Assembly: GCF_031769215.1 (NCBI RefSeq)
Contig: NW_026782351.1
Coordinates: 1-64,000, forward strand
Direction: 5' to 3'
Length of the DNA stretch: 64,000 bases
DNA from: Ylistrum balloti
Taxonomy: Eukaryota
Positions within the stretch are counted from its first letter, which is position 1. Each line of letters starts with the position of its first letter. The position numbers and the translations under genes are program-made. Shown piece after piece: positions 4,601 to 64,000 of the stretch. The notes under the pieces were generated by a model, which was given only the letters and a program-made list of their open reading frames with translations, had not been told where the DNA came from and did no database searches.

Positions 4601-7600
4601 CGGTGCTGTAATCAGAAAATATTCTAACTATATTGTAAGCAAGGATTTTACATCATACAAATATACATCACATTATCAGTAATGCAGTTACATTTGTTTG
4701 CGACACATTCATTAACCTTGAAATACATTGGGTATACTGTGGAGTCTTATTGCCCTCGAAAGATTTATAATTGCCAAATGTGATCTGTGTTTCAACAGAT
4801 GATGCATGGCTTTCAAACTCTTTCTTGTATCTGTTCACCCACACTACATTCGTTGTTCATGAATTTAAAAACTTACTAGAAGCTGTGTACAGAGAAGTAT
4901 TGAGGTATGGTGATGACCTATTGTATGTCAGTCTATCATACCTACAGCTATGTACTAGAGAGGTATGGTGATATTCTACAGTAATTTCGTCTATCATTCC
5001 TTTTGCTGTGTACAGAGAAGTATTGAGGTATGGGAATGGTCTTTGTAATCTCATATTATTGATAATTTACTTACTTGACAAGACAGTAAGAAGGAATATG
5101 TAGTCAGAGAAGGAAATGAGGCCACTCTCCCCAAGCTGATAGAAGATGCTATCCTCTCCCATCTTCCATTCTGCTTTGTTGTGCTGGATATATCAAACAA
5201 AACATCAATAAGGAGCTCAAGTTAACACTAAAAGCCAGAACCACACATTCTAGTTTTACTGGATTTTCAGCATTATTCCAAAATCAAACTTCATTTAATT
5301 CTGAATTAAGCAGAAGTCTTGAATATGATAATGTGGAGAGGATGTAACATATAGCTTACCAGGTGAAAAATTATTTCATATTTCTCATTACTTGAGTCTA
5401 ATAATAATAATAAAAAAAATGTAAATAAATAAAATCATTTATGACATTATCACCCAGTCCTCTTTCTTGCACCTGTTGTTTTGGTGATGATTAGTTAAAA
5501 TACAGCAATACAACACTCTGTATGACAAACAATTTTCATGTCAAACAGATAGGTGAGGATTTGAGTGAGGGAAATATTTATAAGAAACAGTTATAACTTG
5601 TATTATGACACATGACTTTATGGAGGAGTCAGTATCAGTATGGTTTTCCCTATTTTGTTAACAAGGAACTGCGGTATAAAAAATCTGTATCACACATCAC
5701 ACAAAATTAATGGCTAGAGTACTACAAATGTTCTGATACGATACAATGTATGTAAATGTTACAGACAGTTCTTATAAAACAGGATAATAAAGAATTTAAC
5801 CGGACATATAATGTCATCTGGTAGTAATTGGGGAGAAGGTAAACACGAAGGGCAGTGAAGATTCAATCTGTAGGGCAGTGCAAATTAGGTATAACAATGA
5901 TAGAAAGAATCAAAGATGAAGGATAGAGAAGTCATTGTCTATACAAATGATAGTAGTCAGTCAGGTGAGATTTTGTGTTCGAAAGAGACTTGAAGTGTTT
6001 TGAATAAAAACTACAGTAGTTAATGTCTTGAAGTAGTCTAGAGAAGTGAGTGACTGAGAGAGGACTACAGTGGTTAATGTCTAGGTGTAGTCTTGAGGAG
6101 TAAGTGACTGAGAGAGGACTACAGTGGTTAATGTCTAGGTGTAGTCTTGAGGAGTGAGTGACTGAGAGAGGACTGCAGTGGAGTTAGAATCTGAGAGAGG
6201 ACACTGCAGTGGTTAATGTCTGGGTGTAGTCTAGAGGAGTAAGTGACTGAGAGAAGACTGCAGTGGAGTTAGAATCTGAGAGAGGACTGCAGTGGTTAAT
6301 GTCTGGGTGTAGTCTAGTGGAGTGAGTGAATGAGAGAGGACTGCAGTGGTTAGTGTCTGGGTGTAGTCTAGAGGAGTAATTGACTGAGAGAGGACTGCAG
6401 CGGAGTTAGAATCTGAGAGAGGACTGCAGTGGTTAAGTGTCTGGGGTATTCTAGAGGAGTGAGTCACCGAGAGAGGACTGCAGTGGTTAGTGTCTAGGTG
6501 TAGTCTAGTGAACTGAGCAACCGAGAGAGGACTACAGTAGTTAGTGTCTGGGGGTATTCTAGAGGAGTGAGTCACCATGAGAGAGGACTGCAGTGGTTAG
6601 TGTCTTGGGGTATTCTAGAGGAGCGAGTCACCAAGAGATCTGCAGTGGTAAGTGTCTAGGGGTATTCTAGAGGAGTGAGTCACCAAGTGGACTGCAGTGG
6701 TTAGTGTCTAGGGGTATTCTAGAGGAGTCAGCTACTGAGAGAGGACTGCAGTGGTAAGTATCTGGGTGTAGTCTAGAGGAGTGAGTCACTGAGAGAGGAC
6801 TGCAGTGAAGTAAGAGTCTAAGAGGGAACTGTTGTGGTTAGTGTCTTGGGTTGGTCTAAGGAAGTGAGAGTCAGAGAGGACTGCAGTGGTTAATGTTTAG
6901 GGTTAGTTTATAGAAGTGAGAGAGAGAACTGAAGTGTCTGGGGTAGTCTAGAGAGGCAAGTCTGCAAAAGGACTACAGCAGTTCATCTGGAGGTAGTCTA
7001 AAGAAGTGAGTAACTGAGAGAGGACTGCAGTAGTTAGTGTCTGGGGAGAGTCGAGAGAAGGGAGAGGATGTTGATTTATGAGGGTTGTCAAGAAGGGTGA
7101 GAGTATGAGAAAGGACTGCTTTAGTTAGAGTTTTGGGATAGTCTAAAAAAGTGAGTGACTGACTGAGATAGGACTGCTGTGGTTTTTGTCAGGGGGTAGT
7201 CTAGAGAAGTGAGTCAAAGATGACTTTTGTGGTGTAGTGTCAGGGGCTAGTGAATACAAGTGTCTGAAAGAGAATAGTGAAATTGTGACTTTATGAGTGT
7301 TAGAATCTATAGATATTTCTCTCAATATATACCATATGTTCACTGTGTCAAAGATATAGGGAAGAAGATCAGAGAATACCTGATACCTGTGATCTCTTTG
7401 ATACAAAATAAAAGTATGAAATGTAAACATAAAACAGCATGATGGAATAATCAATTGCATTTGATTGGACTATAAACAGGCAATTAAAAAAAACCGCTAT
7501 CAACCTTGAAAGTTTTTCAAGAACAATAAAAATGTCTTAATGTGAACTTTTAGATTTCACCATGATTATATCAGATATATTTCTGTGGTGCAAATAAAAC

Positions 7601-10600
7601 AGGTAGACCCGAGTAGATTGCATTATTTCTGGATGACTAGTGTAAGTGTCTGTGTAGTCTGTTGATAAGGTTTAGTTTTAATAGTACATGTTACAAGACA
7701 CAGGTAAGATACTGATATGTAGGGGGCAGAATAAAAGAGTAAAGAACAGTCAAAAAAATGACTTTAACAAAGACATCAAACGTTGGGAAAGTCAAAGAAG
7801 GGTCTGTATACAATACTGGGTAGTCTAGAGGATATACAGCCAATGAAAAACAAAAAATCTTTATTCATTCAAACTGCTAGGGTATACTAAATTGTTACTG
7901 TGGTATTTCAAATTCTATACAAATTAAGAATGAATGTTGAACAATTTGAGAGCTATATGTGGCAAATACTGTTTCGTATCTACCATATTGTATATATCAT
8001 GAATGACTTACTGTAGGAAAAGAATTCTTTAAATATCAATGGTAGAAATGAAGACAGTTGAATTCTTTTTATTTCCCATTAATCATATGCAATCAAATAC
8101 AGATTCTTATCATCTATCTTATCCAATGGTCAGTCAGTCAAGATTTTACAGTGATAATTGTAATACAAGGAACACTTTATTTACATACTGAAAAGATGGA
8201 TCTTGTGTATGTAATTAATTCCCTTTAATAATAAAAGCAAACAACAAACCTGTCACTCAATCTAAATCTAAGGATGTATTTCATTCAAATAAACCAGGTA
8301 ATTTTTTAAACCTGGAGTATTAGTGGGGAGAAAAAAGGAAAAATATATGTACACCTTCATAAATAACTGTTTACATAATGCTTTACACGAGAAGTAGACA
8401 ATATCAAATTCAATTGGAAGACATTAACAAGAAGAAATGAAAACACACTTTTAAAAATAAATTGAATGGATTATATCCTCATCGACTTAAAAAATGAGAT
8501 CTGCCTACTTAGGAGGGATCTTAACACTTGTTAAGGAAATCAAATGACTCCCGTTTTGGAAAGTAAGGATAATTACCACTGTACAATTACATACTTATCA
8601 ATAGTTTAGAATAACACTCTATGTCTCTAATGAGAAAAAATATATTTTAAAAATGTGCAAGCATGCAATAAGTTGTGAAAAAGGAATGACAGAAACTTTC
8701 AAACACCAACAATCAATGAAATTTGCTTAAAATAAAAAAAAAGAGAAAATTGTACAGAAAATCTCATACCGTTTATTCAAAACAATTTACTATTGGCTAG
8801 TTGTAGCCAGAAAAAAGTAGATTTTTTCTCTAAGCTTTGTCAATTAAAGAGATATTCAATTCAATAATGAAACTAACCTGTTACATATTATAGAAAAATC
8901 TGTCATCCCAGGTTGTAAAGACTCATGGCAAACCGTGCTGTCTACGAAGTTGTATAACTGTACTTATTAACCAAAATGTATCCTCTTTTGTCCCATTGTA
9001 CATCATATTGACATTTAAGGATGTAGAAACCAAAGAAAGGGTGAGTTAGGAAAGAGGGAAGGCTTGTGGGTGATTTAGAGGTAAGATATGTAGGTCATGG
9101 TGAGCAGTGTACTAGATATGCCCCAGTAATGCTTATAAGTTTGGCAAAGGAACTTCTCAAAGTGGTAAAGGTTTCATAGAAAAACATTATATGTCCATAA
9201 TTTGTTTGAAATTTTACACAAACATTTCTCTCACCATCCATAATAATTACATGTACAAGAAATGACATGACAGATAGTTAGGTATAATCATTCATCCTTA
9301 TTTTTTGTAAACTACAGCATCTTTATTTATTTTCCTTTTTAAAAAAAATCAGACACATCAATAGTAAAATAAAACTCAGTAAAATTCAAGAGGTTATGCC
9401 AGGTATGTAGTGTATTTATAGCCATGTAATCTAAAATTTAACTGATCAAATCAGAATACTTACTGAATTTTTAATGAATAAAAGATATAACAGGTCACAT
9501 GACTTGTTTAGAAAATGACAAAGTAATATAGACCTCCAATGAATTGTCATTCTGGTAGAAAATCTTTAATTGTATACGTGTGTATTGTAAACCATATAAC
9601 CAAGTCATCACATGTACATGTTAAATGATACAGCATATAGTGTTCTTTCTGACATAATATTTCATATGTGTTAAAAGTATGTAATTCTGATTAATAATTA
9701 AACAACAAAATCAATACTAGTAACAGGTCAATAATCTAATGCTGCAAGAAGAAAATAGAACTTCACCAGTTAAAAAGAAAATGTGAGGAACACAACTGGA
9801 TTAGCCAAGTATTCTTTTCTTTTTAGTAGGCTATAGAATCATTAACAGTGTCAACAACTCACCTTTGACCCCTAAAGGAATCAACAAAACAGAACAATAT
9901 GTCAATCTAAATTGCACTTCTATTCAAATATATATTTTAAATGTTGATATGATCAGTTATAGTCGTAACTCATAATTCAACCTCTTCTCAGCAGCAGTGC
10001 TGCTAGTCCTCTTAGTTGGGTATAAAACAGACAAATACAAGTCCTTTATCAAAACAAAAACTTCCAGGAATGGTACTGAGGTTTGACATCTTTGTTATTA
10101 TTAACAACATTTTGGAGGGGGGGTTGGTATTTTTGGGATTGGGTGGGGAATAATATGCATGCATTTTGCAAGCACAAGATTAATTCATTAAAATTTGATA
10201 ATTTCACTTGTCACTGTATTTTACAGTGATAAATACATTTATGAAATTGAAAACATGTTACAGTTTAACAAGCACATCCCTTTTTATGACCTTGACCTTG
10301 TGCAATGTTTCAGAAGAAATTGCAAGGCAAATCATTCATATATTCTATCAACTTTTTAATATTGGACTTGTATTCAAAGATTTGTCAGGATCATTCAGAC
10401 TAGCAACTGACCTTGACCCTTGGACTGAGAGTGTTATGTGGTATACAAGCTTGTGTAAACCATTATTGTTATTATTGGGAGTAGGGTAGGGATGGAGGGG
10501 TATCATAAAAGACCAGTTTTAATGGAGAGGCAACAGTTGGCTTGCACAAACATTGAGCAGTGCTTTGGAGGGTTCAAACAAACACTTTAAAAGTAGTAAA

Positions 10601-26389: not shown

Positions 26390-27423
26390 TTTTTTAGGTC
26401 ATAGGGTCGAGATGACCTATAGCCATCGTGCTTTGTCCGTCCTCCGCCGTGCGCCATCCGTAAACTTTTCATTCAAAAAACTTCTCAAATACTAGGAGGC
26501 TAATACTTGGCCCTTAGCATGCTGGGATGGAGCCCTACAAAGTCCATGAATGCTGATATCGGGTCTGTAGCATGTTGAGATGAAGGGCTACCAAGTTTGT
26601 TCAAATGAATGACCTTGACCCACTTTCAAGGTCACAGGGGTCAAATATGTTAAAATATACAAACGACTTCTTCTCAATAAGCAAAAGTCCAAGAGTGCTG
26701 ATATTGGGCCTGTAAGACGCTTGGAAGAAGGGCTACCAAGTTTGTTCAAATAAATGACCTCGACCCACTTTCTAGGTCACCAGGGTCAAATATGTTAATA
26801 TTTTAAAACAACTTCCCAACAACCAAAAGGCTCAGAATGCTGATATTGGGTCTGTAGCATGCTGGGATGAAGGGCTATCAAGTTTGTTCAAATGAATGAC
26901 CTTGACCCACTTTAAAGGCCACAGGGGTCAAATATGTGAAAATATATAAACGACTTCTTCTCAATAAGCAAAAGTCCAAGAGTGCTGATATTTGGCCTGT
27001 AGGATGCTGGGATGAAGGGCTACCAAGTTTATTCAAATAAATGACCTCGACCCACTTTCTAGGTTACAGGGGTCAAATATATTAAAATATACAAATGACT
27101 TCTTCTCAATAAGCAAAAGTCCAACAGTGCTGATAATGGACCTGTAGGATGCATGGATGACATGATACCAAGTTTGTTCAAATGAATGACCTTGGCCCAC
27201 TTTTAAGGTCACAGGGGTTAAATATGTTAAAATCTGTAAACGACTTCTTCTCAGTAACCAAAAGGCTCAGAGTGCTGATATTGGGCCTGTAGGATGCTGG
27301 GAGGAAGGGCTACTAAGTTTATTCAAATGAATAAAGCCAACTGTTTTAACAGCAGACACACAGTTGTTAAGAGTTTGGCTTGCTTTTTGTCAGATGATCG
27401 TTAAGGCCCATGGGCCTCTTGTT
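26390..27423 (+). mobile_element. HINE/Helentron-like non-autonomous element with central ~145-bp tandem array (about 5 copies)
   Basis: T-rich 5' end with subterminal palindrome aggtcat...atgacct, a gtcc-type microsatellite, repeat starts near 26571, 26716, 26858, 27003, 27148, 27293, and a 3' palindrome aggcccatgggcct followed by cttgtt. Confidence 0.8.
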
Positions 27424-34200: not shown

Positions 34201-35620
34201 TCTCTTACCAGGTATATTCTTCATGCTTTGATAGAAATATATTTGAGGGTTTTTTAAACGATTAAGAAAAAAACAGTTGATCTGCTTTGTTTTTTGTTTT
34301 TTTTTAAATTCCTCCATACAGCCATGTTTTCTAGGTTTAAGAAACAATATTTTCAGGTCCTAAAAATGCTTATCTTATATTTTAACCCTGACTGATATTT
34401 AAACCAACATAGGTAGATTGGTAAAAGAAAACCAGTGAGGAAACAAAGTTTCTGAATGCTACTATGTTTCTGTTAAGAAATTAACATTAATTTCCATTCA
34501 AGGTCAAATTTGTTTAAGCGTTTGAATGATTTTTTTTCTCTTAACAACATTAATATAGAGGAATGTAACAGTTACAGTCATCTGTATGGATACACTTATG
34601 TCTTTACCAGTTCAGTGGTAGATAGATGTAACAGTTACAGGCTTTTGTATAAATTGCCTTACCACTTCAGTGGTAGATAGATGTAACAGTTACAGTCATC
34701 TGTATGGATACACTTATGTATTTACCAGTTCAGTGGTAGATAGATGTAACAGTTACAGGCTTTTGTATAAATTGCCTTACCACGCAGTGGTAGATAGATG
34801 TAACAGTTACAGGCTTTGTATAAATTGCCTTACCACTTCAGTGGTAGATAGATGTAACAGTTAGTCATCTGTATGGATACACTTATGTCTTTACCAGTTC
34901 AGTGGTAGATAGATGTAACAGTTACAGTCATCTGTATGGATACACTTATGTCTTTACCAGTTCAGTGGTAGATAGATGTAACAGTTACAGGCTTTTGTGT
35001 AAATTGCCTTACCTCTTCAGTGGTAGATAGATGTAATAGTTACAGGCATCTGTATGGATACACTTATGTCTTTACCAGTTCAGTGGTAGATAGATGTAAC
35101 AGTTACAGTCATCTGTATGGATACACTTATGTCTTTACCAGTTCAGTGGTAGATAGATGTAACAGTTACAGTCATCTGTATGGATACACTTATGTCTTTA
35201 CCAGTTCAGTGGTAGATAGATGTAACAGTTACAGTCATCTGTATGGATACACTTATGTCTTTACCAGTTCAGTGGTAGATAGATGTAACAGTTACAGGCT
35301 TTTGTATAAATTGCCTTACCACTTCAGTGGTAGATAGATTTTAGTATGTATGTTGACTGTAAGCTGTAAAGAAACTGATGTCATGAACACCTATCTAACT
35401 GGATATTACTGTAAAACAATTATATCTTTTGTCTTACCAAAATATCCCATTCAGTATTTCTGTCATTATAACTGGTACAGTGAATTATTCTTCACTTTTT
35501 CAGTCAAAGAGTTTTGTGGAGTCGACACCACAGGTGGTGAAATCTGGTATCTCAAAAGATGAAGCAGAAAAATTGAAGGCAACATTGGAGGCTGTCGGAG
35601 CCTCTGTGGAAGTAATGTAG
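31236..35620 (+). CDS. MRPL12: Mitochondrial ribosomal protein L12 (bL12m), 188 aa
   Basis: Exons 31236-31306, 31669-31843, 32314-32385, 33585-33716, 35504-35620 (567 nt). Arg/Ser/Leu-rich presequence, [96 protein letters not shown]. An alternative in-frame ATG lies at 31248. Confidence 0.95.
32748..33458 (+). mobile_element. HINE/Helentron-like element in MRPL12 intron 3
   Basis: tttttaggtcatctga 5' end and inverted tcagatgacc near the 3' end (33420), degenerate internal repeats (gatttgacccc...), 3' ggccctcttgtt. Confidence 0.7.
34563..35339. repeat. Two-variant minisatellite, 13 units (63-bp A and 55-bp B) sharing a 28-bp core
   Basis: Core cagtggtagatagatgtaacagttacag followed by tcatctgtatggatacacttatgtctttaccagtt (A) or gcttttgtataaattgccttaccactt (B); order A B A B B A A B A A A A B. 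Confidence 0.95.
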
Positions 35621-53790: not shown

Positions 53791-56700
53791 TGTCGTTTAA
53801 AGACTTGAGAAGTAGGTGTTCCTTTTGATTAACATATGAAGCCAAATAGCTTTGTATTCTACTTACAAAGGAAAAGTGTTACATAGTAACTATATTTCAC
53901 TGGCGCCAGTGGCGGGCAGGCCTGAAAATTCTGACTTGTCAGGTCGGGCACTGCAGAAGAAGTCAGTCATGGGATTATATGTTGCCTTACAATCCTTTAA
54001 CCAAATGGTAGAATCTACTGCTAGAGTCTTTAAGAAGTTGAAGTTGAGAGTACATGTCGCCTTAATAACCCCGGCTACTGGAAGTTTTCTAACCAAGGGT
54101 TAGAGTACTTTTTTCTGTCTCGAAAATGAAATAAAAGTTAATGTTGACATTGTCATTTTACACACAGAAATCTATCACTGTTTTATCTAACTAGAGACAG
54201 AGGGTCAATAAATCAAACCCCATCAATTGCAGGGTATTTTCAACTCAATATAGTCTTTCGACATCAACAACTACATTAACAATGTTGGAGGTTCAACATG
54301 GATGGAAACTTTTGACAAGATTGGTCAATGGAATTGGATGGAATTAGATCTCTTTTAACTTTACGGGTAGTGGATTACATTTTGATTTATAGCTATTCAA
54401 GTGTATATATTGCTCAACTAGTTTTCCATTAGTAGCTATCAGGAACTGAAGAAAAGCAAGTTTTTCCAAGATAAAATTGCATATGCACAAAACAGAATTA
54501 CCAGAATTATATCAGAGTGCTTATAAACAACATCGAAAATACATACAATTTTTTTTTTTTAGGAATTAATTGAGTTAATTAAGTAGATACTCAATGCTCT
54601 ATTGTTTTAAATCAAAATTAACTGCAGTATATTAAGATATTATTGATAAACATCCCCAGTGAGTTTCAAGTCTCTTTCATGCATATGCATTTTTATCTGA
54701 AAAATAATTTTTTCTTTCATTTTGGTAAAATTGAAAACAGCTATTATAGCGATATCAAAATTAAACAGGAATAAACCAACATGAGCCCAACCTGCATGTC
54801 AAGTTGTCAACCTTAATCCATTAATATCTTGGATTGAAGCATGTAGATCAATGCTCTATTTTATCAAAGCCTTTAAATTCTGACCCATGTACCATATTGT
54901 TTTTTGTAATGAATTGATATACTCTGTCATTACAGAGTCATATTCAATGAAATGAATTAAAAATATCCTTGTGTAAACCTAGCTCAAATTTCCGTTGGTC
55001 CTCACACCAGACGTTGGACATTTGTTAAACATAAATAATCTCTCACTGCTGATATTTTGATAGAAATGTGTGGAAAGTTGGGCTAGTAGAATTTACTGTA
55101 TGACTTCAGTTAATTGTGTTCCTTGTCTCTTGTACGTACATGTAAATATGTAGGCAGCGTTGGCATTTATGTAATATGAATTGCTCTTTCAATGATTTAT
55201 TGCCAGATAACATATAACACTACCTTTTTAATCATCAGGAAAATATATAAGTAATATTTTATTATTAGATACCATATACCAGATATGTACATTATGTAAT
55301 AGGAAAGTGCAATGGGATGTGACCTGGATTCATATAATATATGTGCACACTGCATATATACAAGTAATTTGGAACCAAATCAGCTCCCAGGTCACTGGTA
55401 CAGAGTGGTGCCAAAAGTATTTGTGACTTTCAAGATGGCAGATGTAGATAGGAAACGATTAAACAATTAAAACTCAAATTAAATATGGGTATCTTCAATT
55501 CACTCTAACCTTCTATTTGGTGAGGTGATTGTGTATTTCTGCCAACAGATGATGGGGGATTGAATTACACAGTGAAAAATATAATCAGATCTCAATGGAA
55601 GCCAGATGTTAGAAATAATGGGCAAAGCGTCTTGTTGAGTCCTGATGTTCGGTACCCAATTTGGAAGAATCTGTTTGATCCACAGTTGTTAATTTTTGAT
55701 AATGTTAATATCAGGAAACTGGGCTGGCCTTGTGATGGTCAGAATATTCTTTTGCTTGTATTAAGTGTTAAGATGTGCTGATGGTCAGGGAAATTGTCAT
55801 CTTGGAAATGTTATGGACTGTCTGTTGGCTGAGTAGAAACATAAGCTAGCAATTCAACATCCCAATATGTTATTGGACATTGATATTACTTAGCTTATGA
55901 ATAGGGTCTGTCATCATCATGGAATTATATTCCACACCATAATAGATACATGTCAGTACTGGAGAGGATCTAGGCACTGGGGTTAGTGACCACTGATTTT
56001 CATCAGAAAATATTACAGTTTTCATTACTAGTCCTCGTAAAGCCGTCTTTTCTTTCCTGTTAATTTCTGATACCACATTTTCTTTCACTACTCAATGTTT
56101 CATATCATTGTTACATTTGTATTACAGATTTTACAGAGATGACCAGAGCTTTAGGGTACCCAAGATTAATATCTATGGAAAATTTTCGAACACCAAATTT
56201 CCCATTAGTTGCAGAAGTTTTAAAATGGCTGGTGAAAAGGTATAGTGTTTTATATATTTTTCTAACATGTACTACAAACACACAAATAAAGATTGAGGAG
56301 GAACATCTTGCATTGTTTCACGTAAAAAGGTAGATCTGACCAATGTTTCATTCTGTTAGAAACATTATCTTATCATTGAATAGCACAGTGATCTATGTGT
56401 TAGAAGTGTTATTTAAACATTTATTATATCCATGTACATGTAGTACAATTATGTTCATGTAATATATTTACAGGAAAATCAACTTACTTAACACTTTTTT
56501 GAAATCTGATATTGCAAGTGATAATTTTTACATAATCTGATTGCAATTTTGGATTGCGACAACTTTTCATCAATGATTTTTTTTTCTAGATATGACCCAA
56601 ATGCTGATGTTCAAGGAGATACTGACACTGAACAGGATAGAGTGATCTTTGTGAAGACTGTAGCAGAGTTTATGGTAAGTGACAAAATATTGTTAGCTTT

Positions 56701-59700
56701 GTAAAGTCTGAAGCCAAGTTTCAAGATAGAGTGATCTTTATAAAGTCTATAGCCAAGTGTCAGGATAGAGTGATCTTTATAAAGTCTATAGCCAAGTGTC
56801 AGGATAGAGTGATCTTTATAAAGTCTATAGCCAAGTGTCAGGATAGAGTGATCTTTATAAAGTCTATAGCCAAGTGTCAGGATAGAGTGATCTTTATAAA
56901 GTCTATAGCCAAGTGTCAGGATAGAGTGATCTTTATAAAGTCTATAGCCAAGTGTCAGGATAGTGATCTTCATAAAGTCAAATGTCAGTGATCTTAACAA
57001 ATTGTGGAACCAAGTGTCAGGATAGTGATCTTCATAAAGTCTGTAACCAAGTGTCATGATAGAATGATATTTACAAATTGTTGAACCAATTGTCAAGATG
57101 GAGTGATCTTTACAAAGTCTGTAACCAAGTGTCAGGATAGAGTGATCTTAACAAATTGTGGAACCAAGTGTCACGATAGAGTGATCTTTACAAAGTCTGT
57201 AACCAAGTGTCACGATAGAGTGATCTTTACAAAGTCTGTAACCAAGTGTTACGATAGAGTGATCTTTACAAAGTCTATAGCCAAGTGTCACGATAGAGTG
57301 ATCTTTACAAAGTCTGTAACCAAGTGTTAGGATAGAGTGATCTTTATAAAGTCTGTAACCAAGTGTCACGATAGAGTGATCTTTACAAAGTCTATAGCCA
57401 AGTGTCACGATAGAGTGATCTTTACAAAGTCTGTAACCAACCAATTGTCAAGTGTTATGATAAGTGATCTTTACAAAGATCTTTACAAAGTCTATAGCCA
57501 AGTGTTATGATAGAGTGATCTTTACAAAGTCTGTAACCAAGTGTCAGGATAGAGTGATCTTTATAAAGTTATACAAATTGTAAAGTCTAACCAAGTGTCT
57601 TTATAAAGTCTATAGCCAAGTGTAGATAAGTGATCTTGTACAAAGTCTGTAACCAAGTGTCACGATAGAGTGATCTTTACAAAGTCTGTAACCAAGTGTT
57701 ATGATAGAGTAATCGTAAAAGTCTGTAGACAAATATCAGCATATAGTGTCCTGTGTAAAATCTGTTGGCAAGTTTATGATAAGTGTCAGGGTAGAGTATC
57801 AGTAAGGTAATGTTTGTAGCAGAGTTACACATAAAAATCTCGCTAAATCACAATGTTATTGATGTGCATTATATCAGAATCTTACACTTGTTCTTATAGT
57901 TGATTTTGTAAACCATTTTGATTCTGACTTTATCATTTTAGGCAACCAAAGCTCACATCAAACTCAACACTAAAAAATTATACCAAGCAGATGGCTATGC
58001 TGTAAAGGAATTGTTGAAAGTAACGTCTGTTCTCTATAACGCCATGAAAACAAATGTAATAGATCAGCTGGAGAACCCAGAGGATGATGTTTCTCACCTG
58101 TCATTTGATGTCTCCTCCAGGGTAGGTCAGATAGATCAGTATGCTTCAATGTCTTCCCCATTGTGCATGTATATTGTATGTCAATCCAAAGCTAACTACA
58201 AAAGTTTTTCTATCAAAATCAATAAAATAGTAGATTATAATGTCATTGACTGTATGTCATAATGATAAAACCGAACAAGTTTTGATTTGGTAGAAATTGA
58301 AGAGATCTGAAGGCCATATGAAATTACTTAAAAAGTGAAGTTCGTAACTCTTCCAAAATTTGTTAAATCAAAATCTTATTGAGGAACACACTGCTTTATG
58401 CTATAGTGATTAGATATCTATGTCAAGTTTTAAAGAAAGTAGTGGAAAATACTGAAAGGAAAAAAAATTCTGACAAAGTTTTGAATGTTTAGGAAAAGCT
58501 AACCATTTATATACTTACTAAACTTTGTTGTATCCAAATCCTTTTCAGTAAACATTTTCATATTATAGTAATAAAACTCTCGAAGATTTGAAGATATCTG
58601 ATCTAAACTAATTAGAGAAGTTTCATGGATAGGATTAAAATGCATGAAATCAAAGGGAAATTACTCTTAAATCCTTGCTGAATCAAATGCTGTTCAGGAT
58701 AACACAATTCCATGTCAGAAATAAATAATACGAGGAAAACTCCAGGCAAGATTTAAGTCATATTACAAAAGATTAGCAAAAATCGAATAGCAATGAAATT
58801 ACCAAGTAGGAAAGCACAACTTCATGTCATAGTTATATAGCCTATCAAGTTTCAAAGAGATTGGTTGAAAACTGAGATCTCTCTTGAAAAACTATCAAAC
58901 AACACATATTTTCTATGGTAAGTAAAAAAGAAAATAGATAAATAAATACCATGTTGCACTGCCATGTCTCTTTTTGGGTATGTCACAAAAAAAAACAAAA
59001 AAAAATTTCAGCCTTTTCTTTCATTTCTTAGCAGGGGTAGGTGGCAGATATCTGTCTCCTTCAAGATAGGTCACAGCGTTTGATATAAAGAATTTGATGT
59101 AAACATAAATACAAATAAAAATGAATCCAGAAGCAAGTTAGGATAACTTATATGTATCCATAGAGACATGGTTAAAAGATGTTCAAGATTTTCATTTCTA
59201 GTTGGTAGAGTTGTTGTGTTCTCTTGATATAACTCATTAAATATGTTAAGCAGTTTAAGTATAAATCTAAGATAACATGCTCTTGTTTTACTTGCTGCAT
59301 CAGGGCAGTAAAACAGGTCTATGAGATAGATGTAGAGGCTGTCTGGCACAATATTGTATTTGAAGTGATATACGTATTAGACACAAAAACGTATGTATAA
59401 AAAGACTGCCAGAACAAAGAAGTGAAAATGTTAGTCGATAGTTTTGAGCACTCCATATATTACATGTATAATTGACACTTGTTTTAAATTAGATTAGTGA
59501 ACTGAAGGAAGCAAGAAGATTAGCATCAGAAATCACAACAAAGGGAGCTACGCTTTATGACCTGTTGGGTAGGGAGGTCGACCTCAGGGTAAGTTATTAT
59601 CATTTACTAGGGATGTCAGCAAGTATTCAAATAGGTACCCATTTGGTAGTATTTCAATAGGAAATTGACATTTGATTATTTATTTAAGCTGTTAATAACA

Positions 59701-62700
59701 TTTGTAAGATGGCTAAGATCTTCGACAAAGTTAGTTTTCATTCTAAATAGAACTTTGTCAGCTAAAACAGCTAAGTATAATTAGAGTTCAAAGTTTTCAC
59801 CTGTACAATTCATCATGACACTAATTAGTAAGAGTGTCTGAGGTCACCATAATCCAGGTTAGTGTCACATCTGATGTGCATGTTATTTTAATATAAGCTT
59901 TAATTTACATTTAGTTCGTGTGACATTGTTCTGAACTTGATAATGTTTCTAGAAGAATTCTTTCCTGCACATTTCTGTATCAAAATAATTCAAAATGATG
60001 CATTATAACTTTTGTATTATTTTAGTGACCCAACATAATCTTTAAGTGAAATAATTTATTCTATTTAAACTATACATCCCATTTGTAATCTGTACAACTG
60101 AAAGTGTAAACCTACAGAACTACAACATTTATTTTTTGGTAAATGTGATTCTGATGTCGAGAGAAACTAAACATCATGCTTTGTCTGTACCCAACAGGAA
60201 CAGAGATCAGTGGTTATTGCCAAATCTCTAGAGATCAATGAAGTAGAGAGTGGGATGGCCAACTCCATCAAGGCTGTTGAGGTAATGTATCCTACTATAA
60301 ACAATACATCTATTGACACAGTATGATTACTATAGGTGTATTGTACATAGCAATTATGTCTTAGCTGTGGACATTATCAATGTTCATGGAAATTATGTCT
60401 TAGCTGTGGACATTATCAATGTTCATGGAAATTATGTCTTAGCTGTGGACATTATCAATGTTCATGGAAATTATGTCTTAGCTGTGAACATGATCAATTA
60501 TGGCAATTATGTCTTTGCTGTGGACATTATCAGTTATCATGGCAATTATGTCTTAGCTGTGGACATAATCAGTTAACATGGCAATTATGTCTTAGCTGTG
60601 GACATTAACAATGTTCATGGCAATTATGTCTTAGCTGTGGACATTAACAATGTTCATGGCAATTATGTCTTAGCTGTGGACATTAACAATGTTCATGGTT
60701 ATTATGTCTTTGCTGTGGACATTAACAATGTTCATGGCAATTATGTCTTAGCTGTGGACATTAACAATGTTCATGGTTATTATGTCTTTGCTGTGGACAT
60801 TATCTGTGTTCATGACAATTATGTCTTAGCTGTGGACATTAACAATATTCATGGCAATTATGTCTTAGCTGTGGACATTAACAATGTTCATGGCAATTAT
60901 GTCTTAGCTGTGGACATTAACAATGTTCATGGCAATTATGTCTTAGCTGTGGACATTAACAATGTTCATGGTTATTATGTCTTTGCTGTGGACATTATCT
61001 GTGTTCATGACAATTATGTCTTAGCTGTGGACATTAACAATATTCATGGCAATTATGTCTTAGCTGTGGACATTAACAATGTTCATGGCAATTATGTCTT
61101 AGCTGTGGACATTAACAATGTTCATGGTTATTATGTCTTAGCTGTGGACATTAACAATGTTCATGGTTATTATGTCTTTGCTGTGGACATTATCAGTGTC
61201 CATGGCAATTATGTCTTAGCTGTGGACATTAACAATGTTCATGGCAATTATGTCTTAGCTGTGGACATTAACAATGTTCATGGTTATTATGTCTTTGCTG
61301 TGGACATTATCAGTGTTCATGGCAATTATGTCTTAGCTGTGGACATTAACAATGTTCATGGCAATTATGTCTTAGCTGTGGACATTAACAATGTTCATGG
61401 TTATTATGTCTTAGCTGTGGACATTATCAGTGCTTATGGTAATTATGTCTGACCTGGGTTACTATCATTGTTATGGTAATATGTTTTGGTAGTGGATTTT
61501 GTCAGTATTGTGGTTACTTTAATGGTTGATATGAATAATACTTTTGAGTTGGGATACATGGTTGAAATGATAAACCTTTGATAAATTCAATATGAAGGGC
61601 TCTTTTATGATTGTATTACAGGAACTGTATTTACGTAATATTGTATTTCCAGTAGACATTCAAATTGACTGTAACCACTTATTGACTGCATATCTCTGCT
61701 TCATGACATACAAATTTCAGAAGTCAGCTGTGAAATTTTAAACTTCCAACAAAATATGGTTACAATTAAGTTTAATAAAACATTGATGATTCCAACTTGA
61801 AATGACAAACAAAAAGGCTTCTGCATTAAAAAAGATAATATATTCTGGTCATATGTAATGTTATTAGCTTAAGCCTTGTTTAAATCTGTTTACGTTGACC
61901 CATCTACATGGTCATATGTGTCAGATTTATCTAAAGCTTTAAAAATCAAACTCACTGGTACATTGTACAACAGTATGTAGTATTGCTGGTTATTTGATTG
62001 ATACTGGCTAACTCTACGAGAAACAGTGGTGAATTCATATTTACATTTAAACCTGTCCATAGAGGCTACACTGGAGCAGAAGAAAAGTGGCCTTAGGCAA
62101 GTGACATTTATACAGAAGTTCAAATACTAATTTGTATTGAATGGGGACCTTTAACCAGTAGGCTTTATAGAGAGGTGTTTGTTATAAAGAGATAGCCTTT
62201 ATAGAAAGGTATCATAATTGTTAAATATAGGTGGCCTGGATATACAGGTATTTGTTATGTACAGGTGGTCTTTATGGGGAGTATTTTGATTTAGAGGTGT
62301 TTGTTATCAAGAGGTAGCCTTTATAGAAAGGTATCATAATTATTAAATATAGGTGGCCTGGATAGACAGGTATTTTTTATGTACAGGTGGTCCTTATAGG
62401 GAGTATTTTTATAAAGAGGCGGTCTTAAGGTATGTTTAGCTTTACTTATGTACCTTTGGCAGTGATTCATACATGCCATCTTCTACATGTCACATTTCTC
62501 AGCTCTACATCTTCATCAGTGGTATCCTAGCTTATCGGATATAGATACTGTTACCATTGTGATGAAAAGATGTGATTCATGTACTTACAGACATGCTATA
62601 AGATATGATTGATTTTAATAATGGTACTACAATGTTTATTGATACTTTTTTAGGCTGAGGTTAAGAAGACACTCCACATGTTAGACAATGTAGCATCGGA

Positions 62701-64000
62701 TGAGGCCAATCTGGAGGCCAAGATTGATAAAAAGAGGAATGAACTGGAGAGAAACAATAAGAGGTTACAGACTCTGCAGAGTGTACGACCTGCTTACATG
62801 GACGAGTATGAGAAACTGGAGGAGGACCTACAGAAGTTATATGAGGTCTACATGAACAAATTCAGGAATCTCACATACCTAGAATCACAACTAGAAGATT
62901 ACAATAGAGCAGAGCAAGATAGATTTGAGGTAAGGGCAGGATAAAATTCAGTTTTATGTAAGAAAGATGTAAAACCAGAGCAGTATAAAACTTGAGGTAA
63001 ACAAGGTGTAATATTAGAGCAGAGGAAAACTGAGAGCTTAACAAATTGTAATATTAGAGCAGAGTAAAACTGAGTTAGAGGTTAACAAGAAGTAGTATTA
63101 GAGCAGGGAAAAATAATTTAGAGGTTAACAAGAAGGTTAAATATAAAAGCAGAGTAAAACTGAATTAGAGGTTAACAAGGTGTAATATTAGAGCAGAGTA
63201 AAACTGAATTAGAGGTTAACAAGAAGTAGTATTAGAGCAGAGTAAAACTGAGTTAGAGGTTAACAAGAAGTAGTATTAGAGCAGAGTAAAACTGAGTTAG
63301 AGGTTAACAAGGTGTAATATTAGAGCAGAGTAAAACTGAGTTAGAGGTTAACAAGAAGTAGTATTAGAGCAGAGTAAAACTGAGTTAGAGGTTAACAAGA
63401 AGTAGTATTAGAGCAGAGTAAAACTGAGTTAGAGGTTAACAAGGTGTAATATTAGAGCAGAGTAAAACTGAATTAGAGGTTAACAAGAAATAGTATTAGA
63501 GCAGAGTAAAACTGAGTTAGAGGTTAACAAGGTGTAATATTAGAGCAGAGTAAAACTGAATTAGAGGTTAACAAGAAATAGTATTAGAGCAGAGTAAAAC
63601 TGAGTTAGAGGTTAACAAGAAGTAGTATTAGAGCAGAGTAAAACTGAGTTAGAGGTTAACAAGAAGTAGTATTAGAGCAGAGTAAAACTGAGTTAGAGGT
63701 TAACAAGAAGTAGTATTAGAGCAGAGTAAAACTGAGTTAGAGGTTAACAAGAAGTAGTATTAGAGCAGAGTAAAACTGAGTTAGAGGTTAACAAGAAGTA
63801 GTATTAGAGCAGAGTAAAACTGAGTTAGAGGTTAACAAGAAGTAGTATTAGAGCAGGGTAAAACAGAGTTTTAGGGGAGAAAGCTTGACATCAGTTTGTT
63901 GTTTTAGTGAATGATTATGAATCATGGTATGTGTGATCTTGACATTTGAGAGGGAAATTGGTTGTTATAGGAAACTGAGGAGAAGCTTAAGCAAATGGCT
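53790..64000 (+). CDS. CLUAP1: Clusterin-associated protein 1 / IFT38 (intraflagellar transport complex B); 3'-partial
   Basis: Exons 53790-53811, 56128-56239, 56590-56674, 57942-58121, 59493-59588, 60198-60281, 62654-62929, 63971-64000 (cut by window edge). Translation [32 protein letters not shown]...EQDRVIF...[26 protein letters not shown]...[13 protein letters not shown]...[13 protein letters not shown]...[16 protein letters not shown]. Confidence 0.96.
55399..56090 (-). pseudogene. Decayed Tc1-family (DD34E-type) transposase fragment with one TIR, in CLUAP1 intron 1
   Basis: Minus-strand motifs KTVIFSDE (about 56000-56020), FQDDNFPDH (about 55780-55808), [13 protein letters not shown] (about 55692-55730) and C-terminal SIPHHL...TK, interrupted by stops and frameshifts. 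TA|CAGAGTGGTGCCAAAAGTATTTG at 55399 resembles Tc1 TIRs. Confidence 0.8.
56696..57790 (+). repeat. 39-bp minisatellite derived from the 3' end of CLUAP1 exon 3
   Basis: Unit caggatagagtgatctttataaagtctatagccaagtgt; its first 32 nt match exon positions 56633-56664 at 28/32; more than 20 copies, degenerating to the right. Confidence 0.95.
60340..61452 (+). repeat. 39-bp minisatellite (about 28 copies) in CLUAP1 intron 6
   Basis: Unit gacattaacaatgttcatggcaattatgtcttagctgtg; a 5-unit (195-bp) higher-order duplication is visible at 60781 and 60976. Confidence 0.95.
62140..62440. mobile_element. Degenerate duplicated ~125-bp block with agaggtggtctttatag-type subrepeats (probable DNA-transposon fragment)
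   Basis: agaggtgtttgttat...agcctttatagaaaggtatcataatt...aggtggcctggata occurs at about 62168 and 62294. Confidence 0.45.
62975..63872 (+). repeat. 44-bp minisatellite (about 20 copies) resembling the 3' end of CLUAP1 exon 7 plus its donor
   Basis: Unit tattagagcagagtaaaactgagttagaggttaacaagaagtag (variant ...aacaaggtgtaa); exon end reads aatagagcagagcaagatagatttgag|gtaagg. Confidence 0.95.

What the first reader, a model, noticed from the sequence alone, without database searches (positions are those of the whole stretch)
56633..57790. Exon echo 1: CLUAP1 intron-3 minisatellite is a tandem amplification of the preceding exon's 3' end
Seen: the 39-bp unit CAGGATAGAGTGATCTTT-ATAAAGTCTATAGC-C-AAGTG-T matches exon 3 CAGGATAGAGTGATCTTT-GTGAAGACTGTAGC at 28/32. 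It then jumps to AAGTG, which matches the donor-site bases, so the stretch AGAGTTTATGGT including the GT appears deleted. The array starts about 20 nt after the donor. It reads [13 protein letters not shown] in the exon's frame versus [14 protein letters not shown] in the exon. From memory, the vertebrate protein has QDRVFFIKAIA here. Inference: the repeat arose from the exon-intron junction with loss of the splice donor, and may preserve an older state of the exon or exchange sequence with it by gene conversion.
Basis: partly seen in the sequence, partly recalled or inferred. Interest (0 to 1): 0.8.

Follow-up and report, generated by a model that had tools for sequence, protein, structure and literature searches.

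The report
Splice-junction minisatellite in CLUAP1 intron
About 90% of this CLUAP1 intron is a tandem repeat copied from the end of the preceding exon plus its splice signal; such repeats are already known from amphioxus ("mirages") and human F7, and here the copies later lost the splice signal, so this one is most likely a harmless by-product.

Summary
Window 56683-57826 is a tandem array of roughly 27-30 units, period 39, lying head-to-tail behind the last 42 nt of CLUAP1 exon 3 plus 8 intron nt (56633-56682). Unit versus exon scores z=15 against shuffles. Its 15-mer and 19-mer occur nowhere else in the 648-Mb genome. Contigs from four other samples in two studies cover both array edges.

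A relic 50-nt unit at the far edge (57737-57786) still carries the exon end plus donor, 10 of 11 bases, and the one change turns donor GT into AT. The 39-nt unit is that form minus 11 nt.

Two details need correction. The array starts at intron +9, not about +20. The Ile codons that look vertebrate-like arose inside the array core, because the edge units keep Val like the exon.

"Older exon state" remains possible only for the Ser codon. Gene conversion is suggested (p about 0.01-0.02) but not shown.

The kind is known: amphioxus "mirages", and human F7, CBS and IFI6. This scan has already noted at least nine such arrays elsewhere in this same genome.

Seven relatives lack this array. One has its own 38-bp repeat at the same junction and another duplicated the exon's acceptor side. 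No RNA data were available. Interest is modest.

The parts
56590..56674 (+). CLUAP1 exon 3 (85 nt), the source of the repeat
   Evidence: Pfam Cluap1 positions 31-61, 37.2 bits. It has an AG acceptor at 56588-56589 and a GT donor at 56675-56676. Orthologous exons were found in 7 other genomes.
56633..56682 (+). Unit 0: the 50-nt founding segment, made of the last 42 nt of exon 3 plus the first 8 intron nt (GTAAGTGA). It is still the working exon end and donor, and is flanked by ACA microhomology at 56632-56634 and 56682-56684.
56683..56721 (+). Unit 1: a degenerate 39-nt edge unit, 28/39 to unit 0. It keeps exon-like G at unit position 19. The in-frame stop TAA at 56702-56704 ends any read-through of the donor.
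56722..56955 (+). Proximal homogeneous block: six 39-nt units, five of them identical, 32/39 to the exon. The first 18 nt are identical to the exon.
56956..57171 (+). Irregular middle zone with truncated and variant units.
   Evidence: Other samples carry an AG insertion behind 57023 that restores a full unit.
57172..57699 (+). Distal block of variant 39-nt units (unit positions: 3 C, 20 C, 28 G, 31 A, and hybrids), with partial 78/117-nt higher-order periodicity.
57700..57736 (+). Decayed edge unit (37 nt).
57737..57786 (+). Relic 50-nt unit that still holds the exon end plus donor region. The block at 57773-57783 matches the exon junction 56669-56679 at 10/11. The former donor GT reads AT at 57779-57780.
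   Evidence: score 24 against 9.1 +/- 1.3 in shuffles; 36/50 without gaps
57787..57826 (+). Last, partial relic unit. Its final 12 nt (57815-57826) are identical to the exon at 56659-56670, and more exon-like there than any core unit.
57827..57941 (+). Remaining non-repeat part of intron 3 (115 nt) up to the acceptor. Exon 4 follows at 57942-58121.
   Evidence: Intron 3 is 1267 nt, of which 1144 nt (90%) derive from the array.

Best explanation
This is a boundary-spanning ("mirage"-type) minisatellite. A 50-nt piece covering the last 42 nt of CLUAP1 exon 3 and the first 8 nt of intron 3 was duplicated in tandem, probably by slippage or unequal exchange at a 3-nt ACA microhomology. The first copy stayed as the working exon end and donor. 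All later copies lie downstream of that donor and so are intronic. One copy lost 11 nt, including the donor GT, through a deletion between two AAGT words, which gave a 39-nt unit. That unit was then amplified to about 25 copies and is still being homogenised, as five identical units show. Units at the two edges escaped homogenisation and keep older forms, including one 50-nt relic whose donor reads AT. The array now makes up 90% of the intron. It most likely has no function: the intron is simply longer and splicing uses the first donor. Shown here: the homology, the relic, locus specificity, presence in independent samples, and absence from seven relatives. Inferred: the order of events, the microhomology mechanism, and neutrality.
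For: The array and its period are. The unit matches the exon at z=15, with an 11-nt gap over the donor. The relic unit carries the junction block at 10/11 and is 36/50 overall. In register, the array is contiguous with the exon segment. The edge units are exon-like at unit positions 19 and 28, and the last relic also at 33-34, while the core is homogenised; this is the pattern described for amphioxus mirage clusters (PMC3087553). The 15-mer and 19-mer are exact only in this locus of the 648-Mb genome, and BLAST of the array finds only this locus. In all four runs laid, from two studies, contigs run 56000-56754 and 57670-58300, so both edges are real. The exon is conserved in 7 other genomes, 5 of which show no repeat in intron 3. 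In two of them intron 3 is only about 124-188 nt, so the exon is the source and the array the copy. For human F7 it was shown by experiment that only the most upstream of several reiterated donors is used (PMC1557585).
Against: No RNA run holds this stretch, so use of the first donor and the absence of exonised units are assumed, not shown. The full array length is not confirmed, because short-read contigs break inside it. The first 14 nt of unit 1 match the unit only 8/14, so they could be original intron rather than a decayed unit. The last unit ends early. The exact limits of the founding duplication are therefore uncertain. The core's 5' half is identical to the exon (0/18) while the edges differ at 11/36 (p=0.01), which plain neutral decay does not predict.
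Confidence: 0.85

Rival explanations
1. Same origin, but the exon and the array still exchange sequence by gene conversion, or did so after the founding event. Under this view the array is partly a record of exon history and could feed changes back into the exon.
For: There is a mosaic pattern. The core units equal the exon in all of the first 18 nt but differ at 6-7 of the next 18 (Fisher p=0.019 and 0.041). The edge units differ at 5-6 of the first 18 (core against edges, p=0.0099). The core's 3' half shares derived states (unit positions 33 C and 34 A, and the 11-nt deletion) with the old edge units, so the 5' half looks younger than the 3' half.
Against: The numbers are small, about 18 sites per half. 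Part of the 3' excess may be changes in the exon itself, since its Val-Lys-Thr-Val is unusual among 7 outgroups. No population data or conversion tract were observed. An unequal crossover involving unit 0 would destroy the exon or duplicate the donor, and neither is seen.
Confidence: 0.2
2. The array has been taken up for a function. Many intronic copies of an exon piece just downstream of the donor could bind splicing factors or slow the polymerase, and so tune recognition of exon 3 or CLUAP1 expression.
For: The array begins 9 nt after the donor and carries about 25 copies of 18 nt of exon sequence, conserved better than the rest of the unit. A second junction-derived array sits in the same gene.
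Against: Seven relatives manage without it. The units vary, and are truncated and rearranged. The depth ratio of the core unitig differs between individuals, 1.9x to 6x, which fits free copy-number drift. There are no RNA data. In F7 and in amphioxus such arrays do not disturb splicing.
Confidence: 0.06
3. The similarity is coincidental: the array is a dispersed satellite or a repeat carried by a transposon that landed next to the exon.
For: Bivalve genomes are rich in transposon-borne satellites. A 38-nt-period array on contig C551 shares 17 of 19 bases of one motif.
Against: All exact 15-mer and 19-mer hits lie in this locus, and hits with mismatches are at the level of the reversed-pattern control. 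The C551 array lacks the rest of the unit, and the C519 hit is an unrelated AT-rich repeat. The relic unit reproduces the exon-donor junction itself.
Confidence: 0.01
4. Assembly artefact: the array, or its length, was created by misassembly of reads.
For: No contig or read spans the array, and bins 56770-56846 and 57309-57462 have no contig in any run.
Against: Both edges, including units 0-2 and the three relic units, lie on long contigs in all four samples laid, which carry two organism labels from two studies. Core unitigs are present at 2-6 times the flank depth. Gaps inside a 39-nt repeat are expected with 31-mer contigs.
Confidence: 0.03

Closest known systems
Amphioxus "mirage" minisatellites (Adh3, troponin C, globins BflGb6 and BflGb9, PGBD5), read in PMC3087553 and PMC3902484
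   Same: They are tandem repeats that span an exon-intron boundary inside a gene. They are locus-specific, with a homogenised centre and diverged boundary units. Many but not all units keep the splice signal, and they are reported not to disturb splicing.
   Different: Those units are mostly larger (up to 160 bp) and usually keep AG/GT. Here nearly all units have lost the donor through one 11-nt deletion, the array is longer (about 1.1 kb, 90% of the intron), and the host is a mollusc.
Human F7 IVS7 37-bp VNTR and similar arrays in IFI6 (6-16), CBS intron 13, LMNB2 and PDGF intron 4 (PMC1557585)
   Same: The first monomer contains the exon-intron junction, the following monomers are intronic, and the array is polymorphic in length.
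   Different: The F7 unit holds only 4 exon nt and repeats an intact donor 5-9 times. Here 42 exon nt are copied, so the unit still reads as CLUAP1 protein, and the donor is absent from the amplified units. No splicing data exist here.
Intron gain or extension by internal tandem duplication of a junction or AGGT-containing segment, for example the potato RdRp case (PMC4974935; title and abstract only)
   Same: A short intragenic tandem duplication that includes a splice signal changes the exon-intron structure without changing the protein.
   Different: No new intron is created here. An existing intron is lengthened about tenfold.

Membership tests
Boundary-spanning ("mirage" / F7-type) minisatellite | Head-to-tail tandem array whose first unit contains the exon-intron boundary | tested here: met
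   Unit 0 (56633-56682) holds 42 exon nt plus the donor. Units follow in register from 56683. Caveat: the first 14 nt of unit 1 match only 8/14.
Boundary-spanning ("mirage" / F7-type) minisatellite | Units are homologous to the gene's own junction, not to a dispersed repeat | tested here: met
   z=15 against shuffles. The relic unit carries the junction block at 10/11. Exact 15-mer and 19-mer hits occur only in this locus of the genome.
Boundary-spanning ("mirage" / F7-type) minisatellite | Splice-site sequence reiterated in the units (typical, but per PMC3087553 not present in every unit) | tested here: not met
   All 39-nt units lack the 11 nt that hold the donor, and the one 50-nt relic reads AT for GT. 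The feature was present in the ancestral unit and has been lost since.
Boundary-spanning ("mirage" / F7-type) minisatellite | Homogenised centre with diverged boundary units (concerted evolution) | tested here: met
   There are five identical units. The distal block units are 35-37/39 to the consensus, against 28-29/39 for edge and relic units. The relics are 28/36 to 36/50 to the exon segment.
Boundary-spanning ("mirage" / F7-type) minisatellite | Length polymorphism between individuals | tested here: inconclusive
   Only contigs were available. The core unitig's depth is 1.9x, 3.2x, 3.1x and 6.0x that of the flank in four runs, and there is a 2-nt unit variant. This is suggestive only.
Boundary-spanning ("mirage" / F7-type) minisatellite | Normal splicing from the authentic, most upstream donor | not testable with these tools
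CLUAP1 / IFT38 gene (host) | Exons match Pfam Cluap1 in order, above the cut-off | tested here: met
   Five exon matches cover profile positions 1-267. Exon 3 also matches the Clusterin-associated protein 1 chain of PDB 8bd7 at residues 45-74, weakly (E=0.07).

The most novel reading that the evidence does not exclude
The exon 3 boundaries of CLUAP1 may be a recurrent hotspot for junction-spanning tandem duplication in bivalves. Three of the eight genomes with an alignable exon 3 show one, each an independent event, against none to one echo at the 40 other junction sides tested. That would point to a sequence-dependent or splicing/transcription-coupled mutational process. Under the same reading, such arrays would act as datable fossils of past exon states and would exchange sequence with the exon.
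Probability: 0.1. Interest if true: 0.6.

Novelty: new member of a known kind. Interest (0 to 1): 0.3.

Why it matters
It gives a clean, stepwise example of how a short intron can grow tenfold from its own exon-intron junction. All the intermediates are still readable in one locus: the founding 50-nt segment, a relic with a dead donor, the 11-nt deletion derivative, and young identical units. It also adds molluscs to the animals that carry "mirage" repeats. For annotation it is a practical warning, because the intronic array translates in frame into a CLUAP1-like peptide that reaches the Pfam cut-off and could mislead gene predictors. It does not reveal a new mechanism, and the same genome holds many such arrays.

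Tried and rejected
1. Dispersed-repeat origin is rejected. The BLAST hit on C519 is an unrelated AT-rich minisatellite. The C551 cluster shares only part of a motif.

2. The neighbouring 39-nt array at 60342-61450 is not derived from its upstream exon (z=-0.8). "Exon echo" is therefore not a property of every array in this gene.

3. I looked for the array in relatives. The exon-4 reading frame found exon-sized ORFs on genome contigs, and eight loci were fetched. None holds a homologous array. None is a close relative either, at 74-85% protein identity in exon 4, so the age of the array could not be bracketed.

4. Polarising the exon/array differences with outgroups gave mixed signals, because Ile/Val and Ser/Thr flip repeatedly among taxa.

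5. RNA evidence: no RNA run was listed.

6. Long-read check of copy number: only Logan contigs were served.

7. Coding potential of the array: the reading frames are broken by stops and frame shifts on both strands, so this is rejected.

8. I did not build a spliced CLUAP1 protein. Exons were searched one by one by reference and the joined step was left out. The large representative-protein search was not used.
Full report
**What is there**

Window 56590-56674 (+) is an exon of CLUAP1/IFT38. It matches Pfam Cluap1 positions 31-61 at 37.2 bits, and it is one of five ordered exon matches in the window. It also aligns, weakly (E=0.07), to residues 45-74 of the Clusterin-associated protein 1 chain of PDB 8bd7. 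An upstream coding exon ends near 56240. The next exon is 57942-58121.

The donor GT is at 56675-56676. Intron 3 is 1267 nt long.

Tandem Repeats Finder reports a period-39 array from 56697 to 57748. It has 7.3 copies at 96% identity, followed by 18.6 copies at 79%, with partial 78- and 117-nt periodicity.

- The unit's first 18 nt are identical to the exon, and 28 of the first 32 match.
- Aligning two units to the 400 nt upstream of the array scores 33, against 9.3 +/- 1.6 for shuffles.
- The 15-mer GATAGAGTGATCTTT has 17 exact hits in the whole 648-Mb assembly. One is in the exon and 16 are in the array.
- An array-only 19-mer has 19 exact hits, all in this locus. Hits with one or two mismatches are no more frequent than for the reversed control pattern.
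- BLAST of the array finds only this locus plus one weak hit that is an unrelated AT-rich minisatellite.
- A cluster on contig C551 shares part of one motif but not the rest of the unit.
- The in-frame translation of the intronic array reaches the Cluap1 Pfam cut-off: 25.9 bits, four stretches, profile positions 43-58.

**Anatomy in register**

A wrap-around alignment, followed by an alignment of single units to the 50 nt at 56633-56682, gives this layout:

| Part | Coordinates | Description |
|---|---|---|
| Unit 0 | 56633-56682 | Last 42 exon nt plus GTAAGTGA |
| Unit 1 | 56683-56721 | Degenerate 39-nt unit, 28/39 to unit 0 |
| Proximal block | 56722-56955 | Six units, five identical |
| Middle zone | 56956-57171 | Irregular, truncated and variant units |
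| Distal block | 57172-57699 | Variant 39-nt units |
| Decayed unit | 57700-57736 | 37 nt |
| Relic unit | 57737-57786 | 50 nt, keeps the junction |
| Last unit | 57787-57826 | Partial |

The array therefore abuts the exon-derived segment at intron +9. The "about 20 nt after the donor" in the finding is only where periodicity becomes obvious. One caveat: the first 14 nt of unit 1 match the unit only 8/14, so they might be original intron.

In total 1144 of the 1267 intron nt (90%) derive from the array. In two relatives the same intron is only about 124-188 nt.

**The key new evidence for origin**

- The 50-nt relic aligns to exon end plus donor without a gap, at 36/50. The local alignment scores 24, against 9.1 +/- 1.3 for shuffles.
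- It keeps the 11-nt block that the 39-nt units lack. The block at 57773-57783 matches the exon junction 56669-56679 at 10 of 11 positions. The single difference is the donor's G, now A.
- The ancestral unit was therefore the 50-nt junction segment.
- In the relic the 11 nt lie between two AAGT words. Deleting one repeat plus the spacer yields exactly the AAGTGT tail of the 39-nt unit.
- The last partial unit ends in 12 nt identical to exon 56659-56670. That is closer to the exon there than any core unit.
- The 50-nt segment is bounded by ACA on both sides. This fits a microhomology-mediated tandem duplication, which is an inference.

**Direction of copying**

The exon is conserved in seven other genomes fetched through exon-4 ORFs. 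Five of them have no repeat in intron 3, and none has a homologous array. The exon is therefore the source and the array the copy.

**Is it real DNA?**

Logan contigs were laid from four of the seven listed runs, carrying two organism labels from two studies. In all four, one contig runs 56000-56754, through the exon and units 0-1 into unit 2. Another runs 57670-58300, through the three relic units.

The contigs break inside the homogeneous repeat, as 31-mer assemblies must. The edges are therefore confirmed, but the total length is not.

The core unitig's depth is 1.9x, 3.2x, 3.1x and 6.0x the flank depth in the four runs, and two runs carry a 2-nt unit variant. This hints at copy-number and unit polymorphism, but contig depth is a weak measure. 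No RNA run was listed, so splicing could not be checked.

**"Older exon state" and gene conversion**

At the first Ile/Val codon all seven outgroup exons have ATH (Ile). The exon here has GTG, the core units ATA or ACA, and both old edge units GTA. The simplest reading is that the exon already read Val when it was copied, and the core later changed G to A. The core's Ile is then a coincidence.

At the Ser/Thr codon all alignable units, and 6 of 7 outgroups, have TCN, while the exon has ACT. That fits an older state preserved in the array. However, L026 and protein P0017 also have Thr, and P0093 has Val-Lys-Ser-Val, so these sites flip often and the count of changes is equal under both readings. 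I put the "fossil Ser" reading at roughly two in three.

For exchange between exon and array, the core differs from the exon at 0/18 positions in the 5' half against 6/18 in the 3' half (p=0.019). The edges differ at 11/36 in the 5' half (p=0.0099 against the core). This mosaic is suggestive. But the numbers are small, and part of the 3' excess may be changes in the exon itself.

**Comparison with what is known**

Minisatellites whose first unit spans an exon-intron boundary are described for human F7 intron 7, IFI6, CBS, LMNB2 and PDGF. In F7, experiments showed that only the most upstream donor is used (PMC1557585).

In amphioxus they are called "mirages" and occur in Adh3, troponin C, globins and PGBD5. 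They have homogenised centres and diverged boundary units, and not every unit keeps a splice signal (PMC3087553 and PMC3902484).

This array fits that kind. Its particular features are:

- a long exon share (42 nt), so the unit still reads as protein;
- loss of the donor from all amplified units, with a dead-donor relic left at the edge;
- a mollusc host.

I found no paper in the held library describing such arrays in molluscs.

**This genome and its relatives**

After I had reached this reading, the scan's notes showed at least nine earlier findings of the same kind elsewhere in this genome. The notes call it a scallop, and one names Ylistrum balloti; I did not test the name. A sister note covers a 44-nt array after exon 8 of this same gene. 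My quick check of that one gives a score of 15 against 7.8 +/- 1.7.

Among the relatives, L026 has its own young 38-nt x 2.8 repeat at 7426-7531. Its first unit is the last 11 nt of exon 3 plus 27 intron nt, with donors intact. L029 has an 83-nt-period duplication of the 5' part of exon 3 just upstream of the acceptor, 55/58 identical.

In a small scan of 56 junction sides in nine genomes, the three clear echoes were all at exon 3. This may be a hotspot or may be chance.

**Verdict**

The "older state" and conversion ideas remain open, with the Ile part rejected. The array is most likely a tolerated by-product of local tandem duplication.

It is a new member of a known kind that is already frequent in this genome, so interest is modest. 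I built no spliced protein model. Exons were searched singly by reference and the joined step was left out.

Noticed in passing
window 62902-63872: A 44-nt array after CLUAP1 exon 8 also resembles the exon end plus donor (score 15 against 7.8 +/- 1.7 in shuffles). It is the scan's separate finding "Exon echo 2", so one gene holds two junction-derived arrays.
   Followed up: partly
window 60342-61450: A 39-nt x 28.5 minisatellite at 91% identity in the intron after the exon at 60198-60281. It shows no similarity to the upstream exon (z=-0.8), and its origin is unknown.
   Followed up: partly
L026:7426-7531: In another (unnamed) genome the same exon 3/intron 3 junction of CLUAP1 carries an independent young 38-nt x 2.8 repeat: 11 exon nt plus 27 intron nt, with three intact GTAAGT donors. 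The same intron also holds a 168-nt x 5.8 array at 8267-9230.
   Followed up: partly
L029:9135-9275: In a third genome, 58 nt from the 5' part of CLUAP1 exon 3 are duplicated 83 nt upstream (55/58 identical), just before the acceptor. This is a boundary duplication on the acceptor side.
   Followed up: partly
L030 (G000:C551:203300-204900): A complex minisatellite with a 19-nt base motif and 38/57/190-nt higher-order periods. It shares 17 of 19 bases with part of the CLUAP1 unit but is otherwise unrelated.
   Followed up: partly
window 62164-62419; 34563-35297; 26539-27332; 6010-6922: There are several further minisatellites (122-, 63-, 145- and 54-nt units) in this 64-kb window, so the region is very rich in tandem repeats. 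Their relation to exons was not examined.
   Followed up: no
L022:10143-11207; L026:1185-3572: ORFs with a reverse-transcriptase domain (RVT_1) lie next to or inside CLUAP1 introns in two relatives.
   Followed up: no
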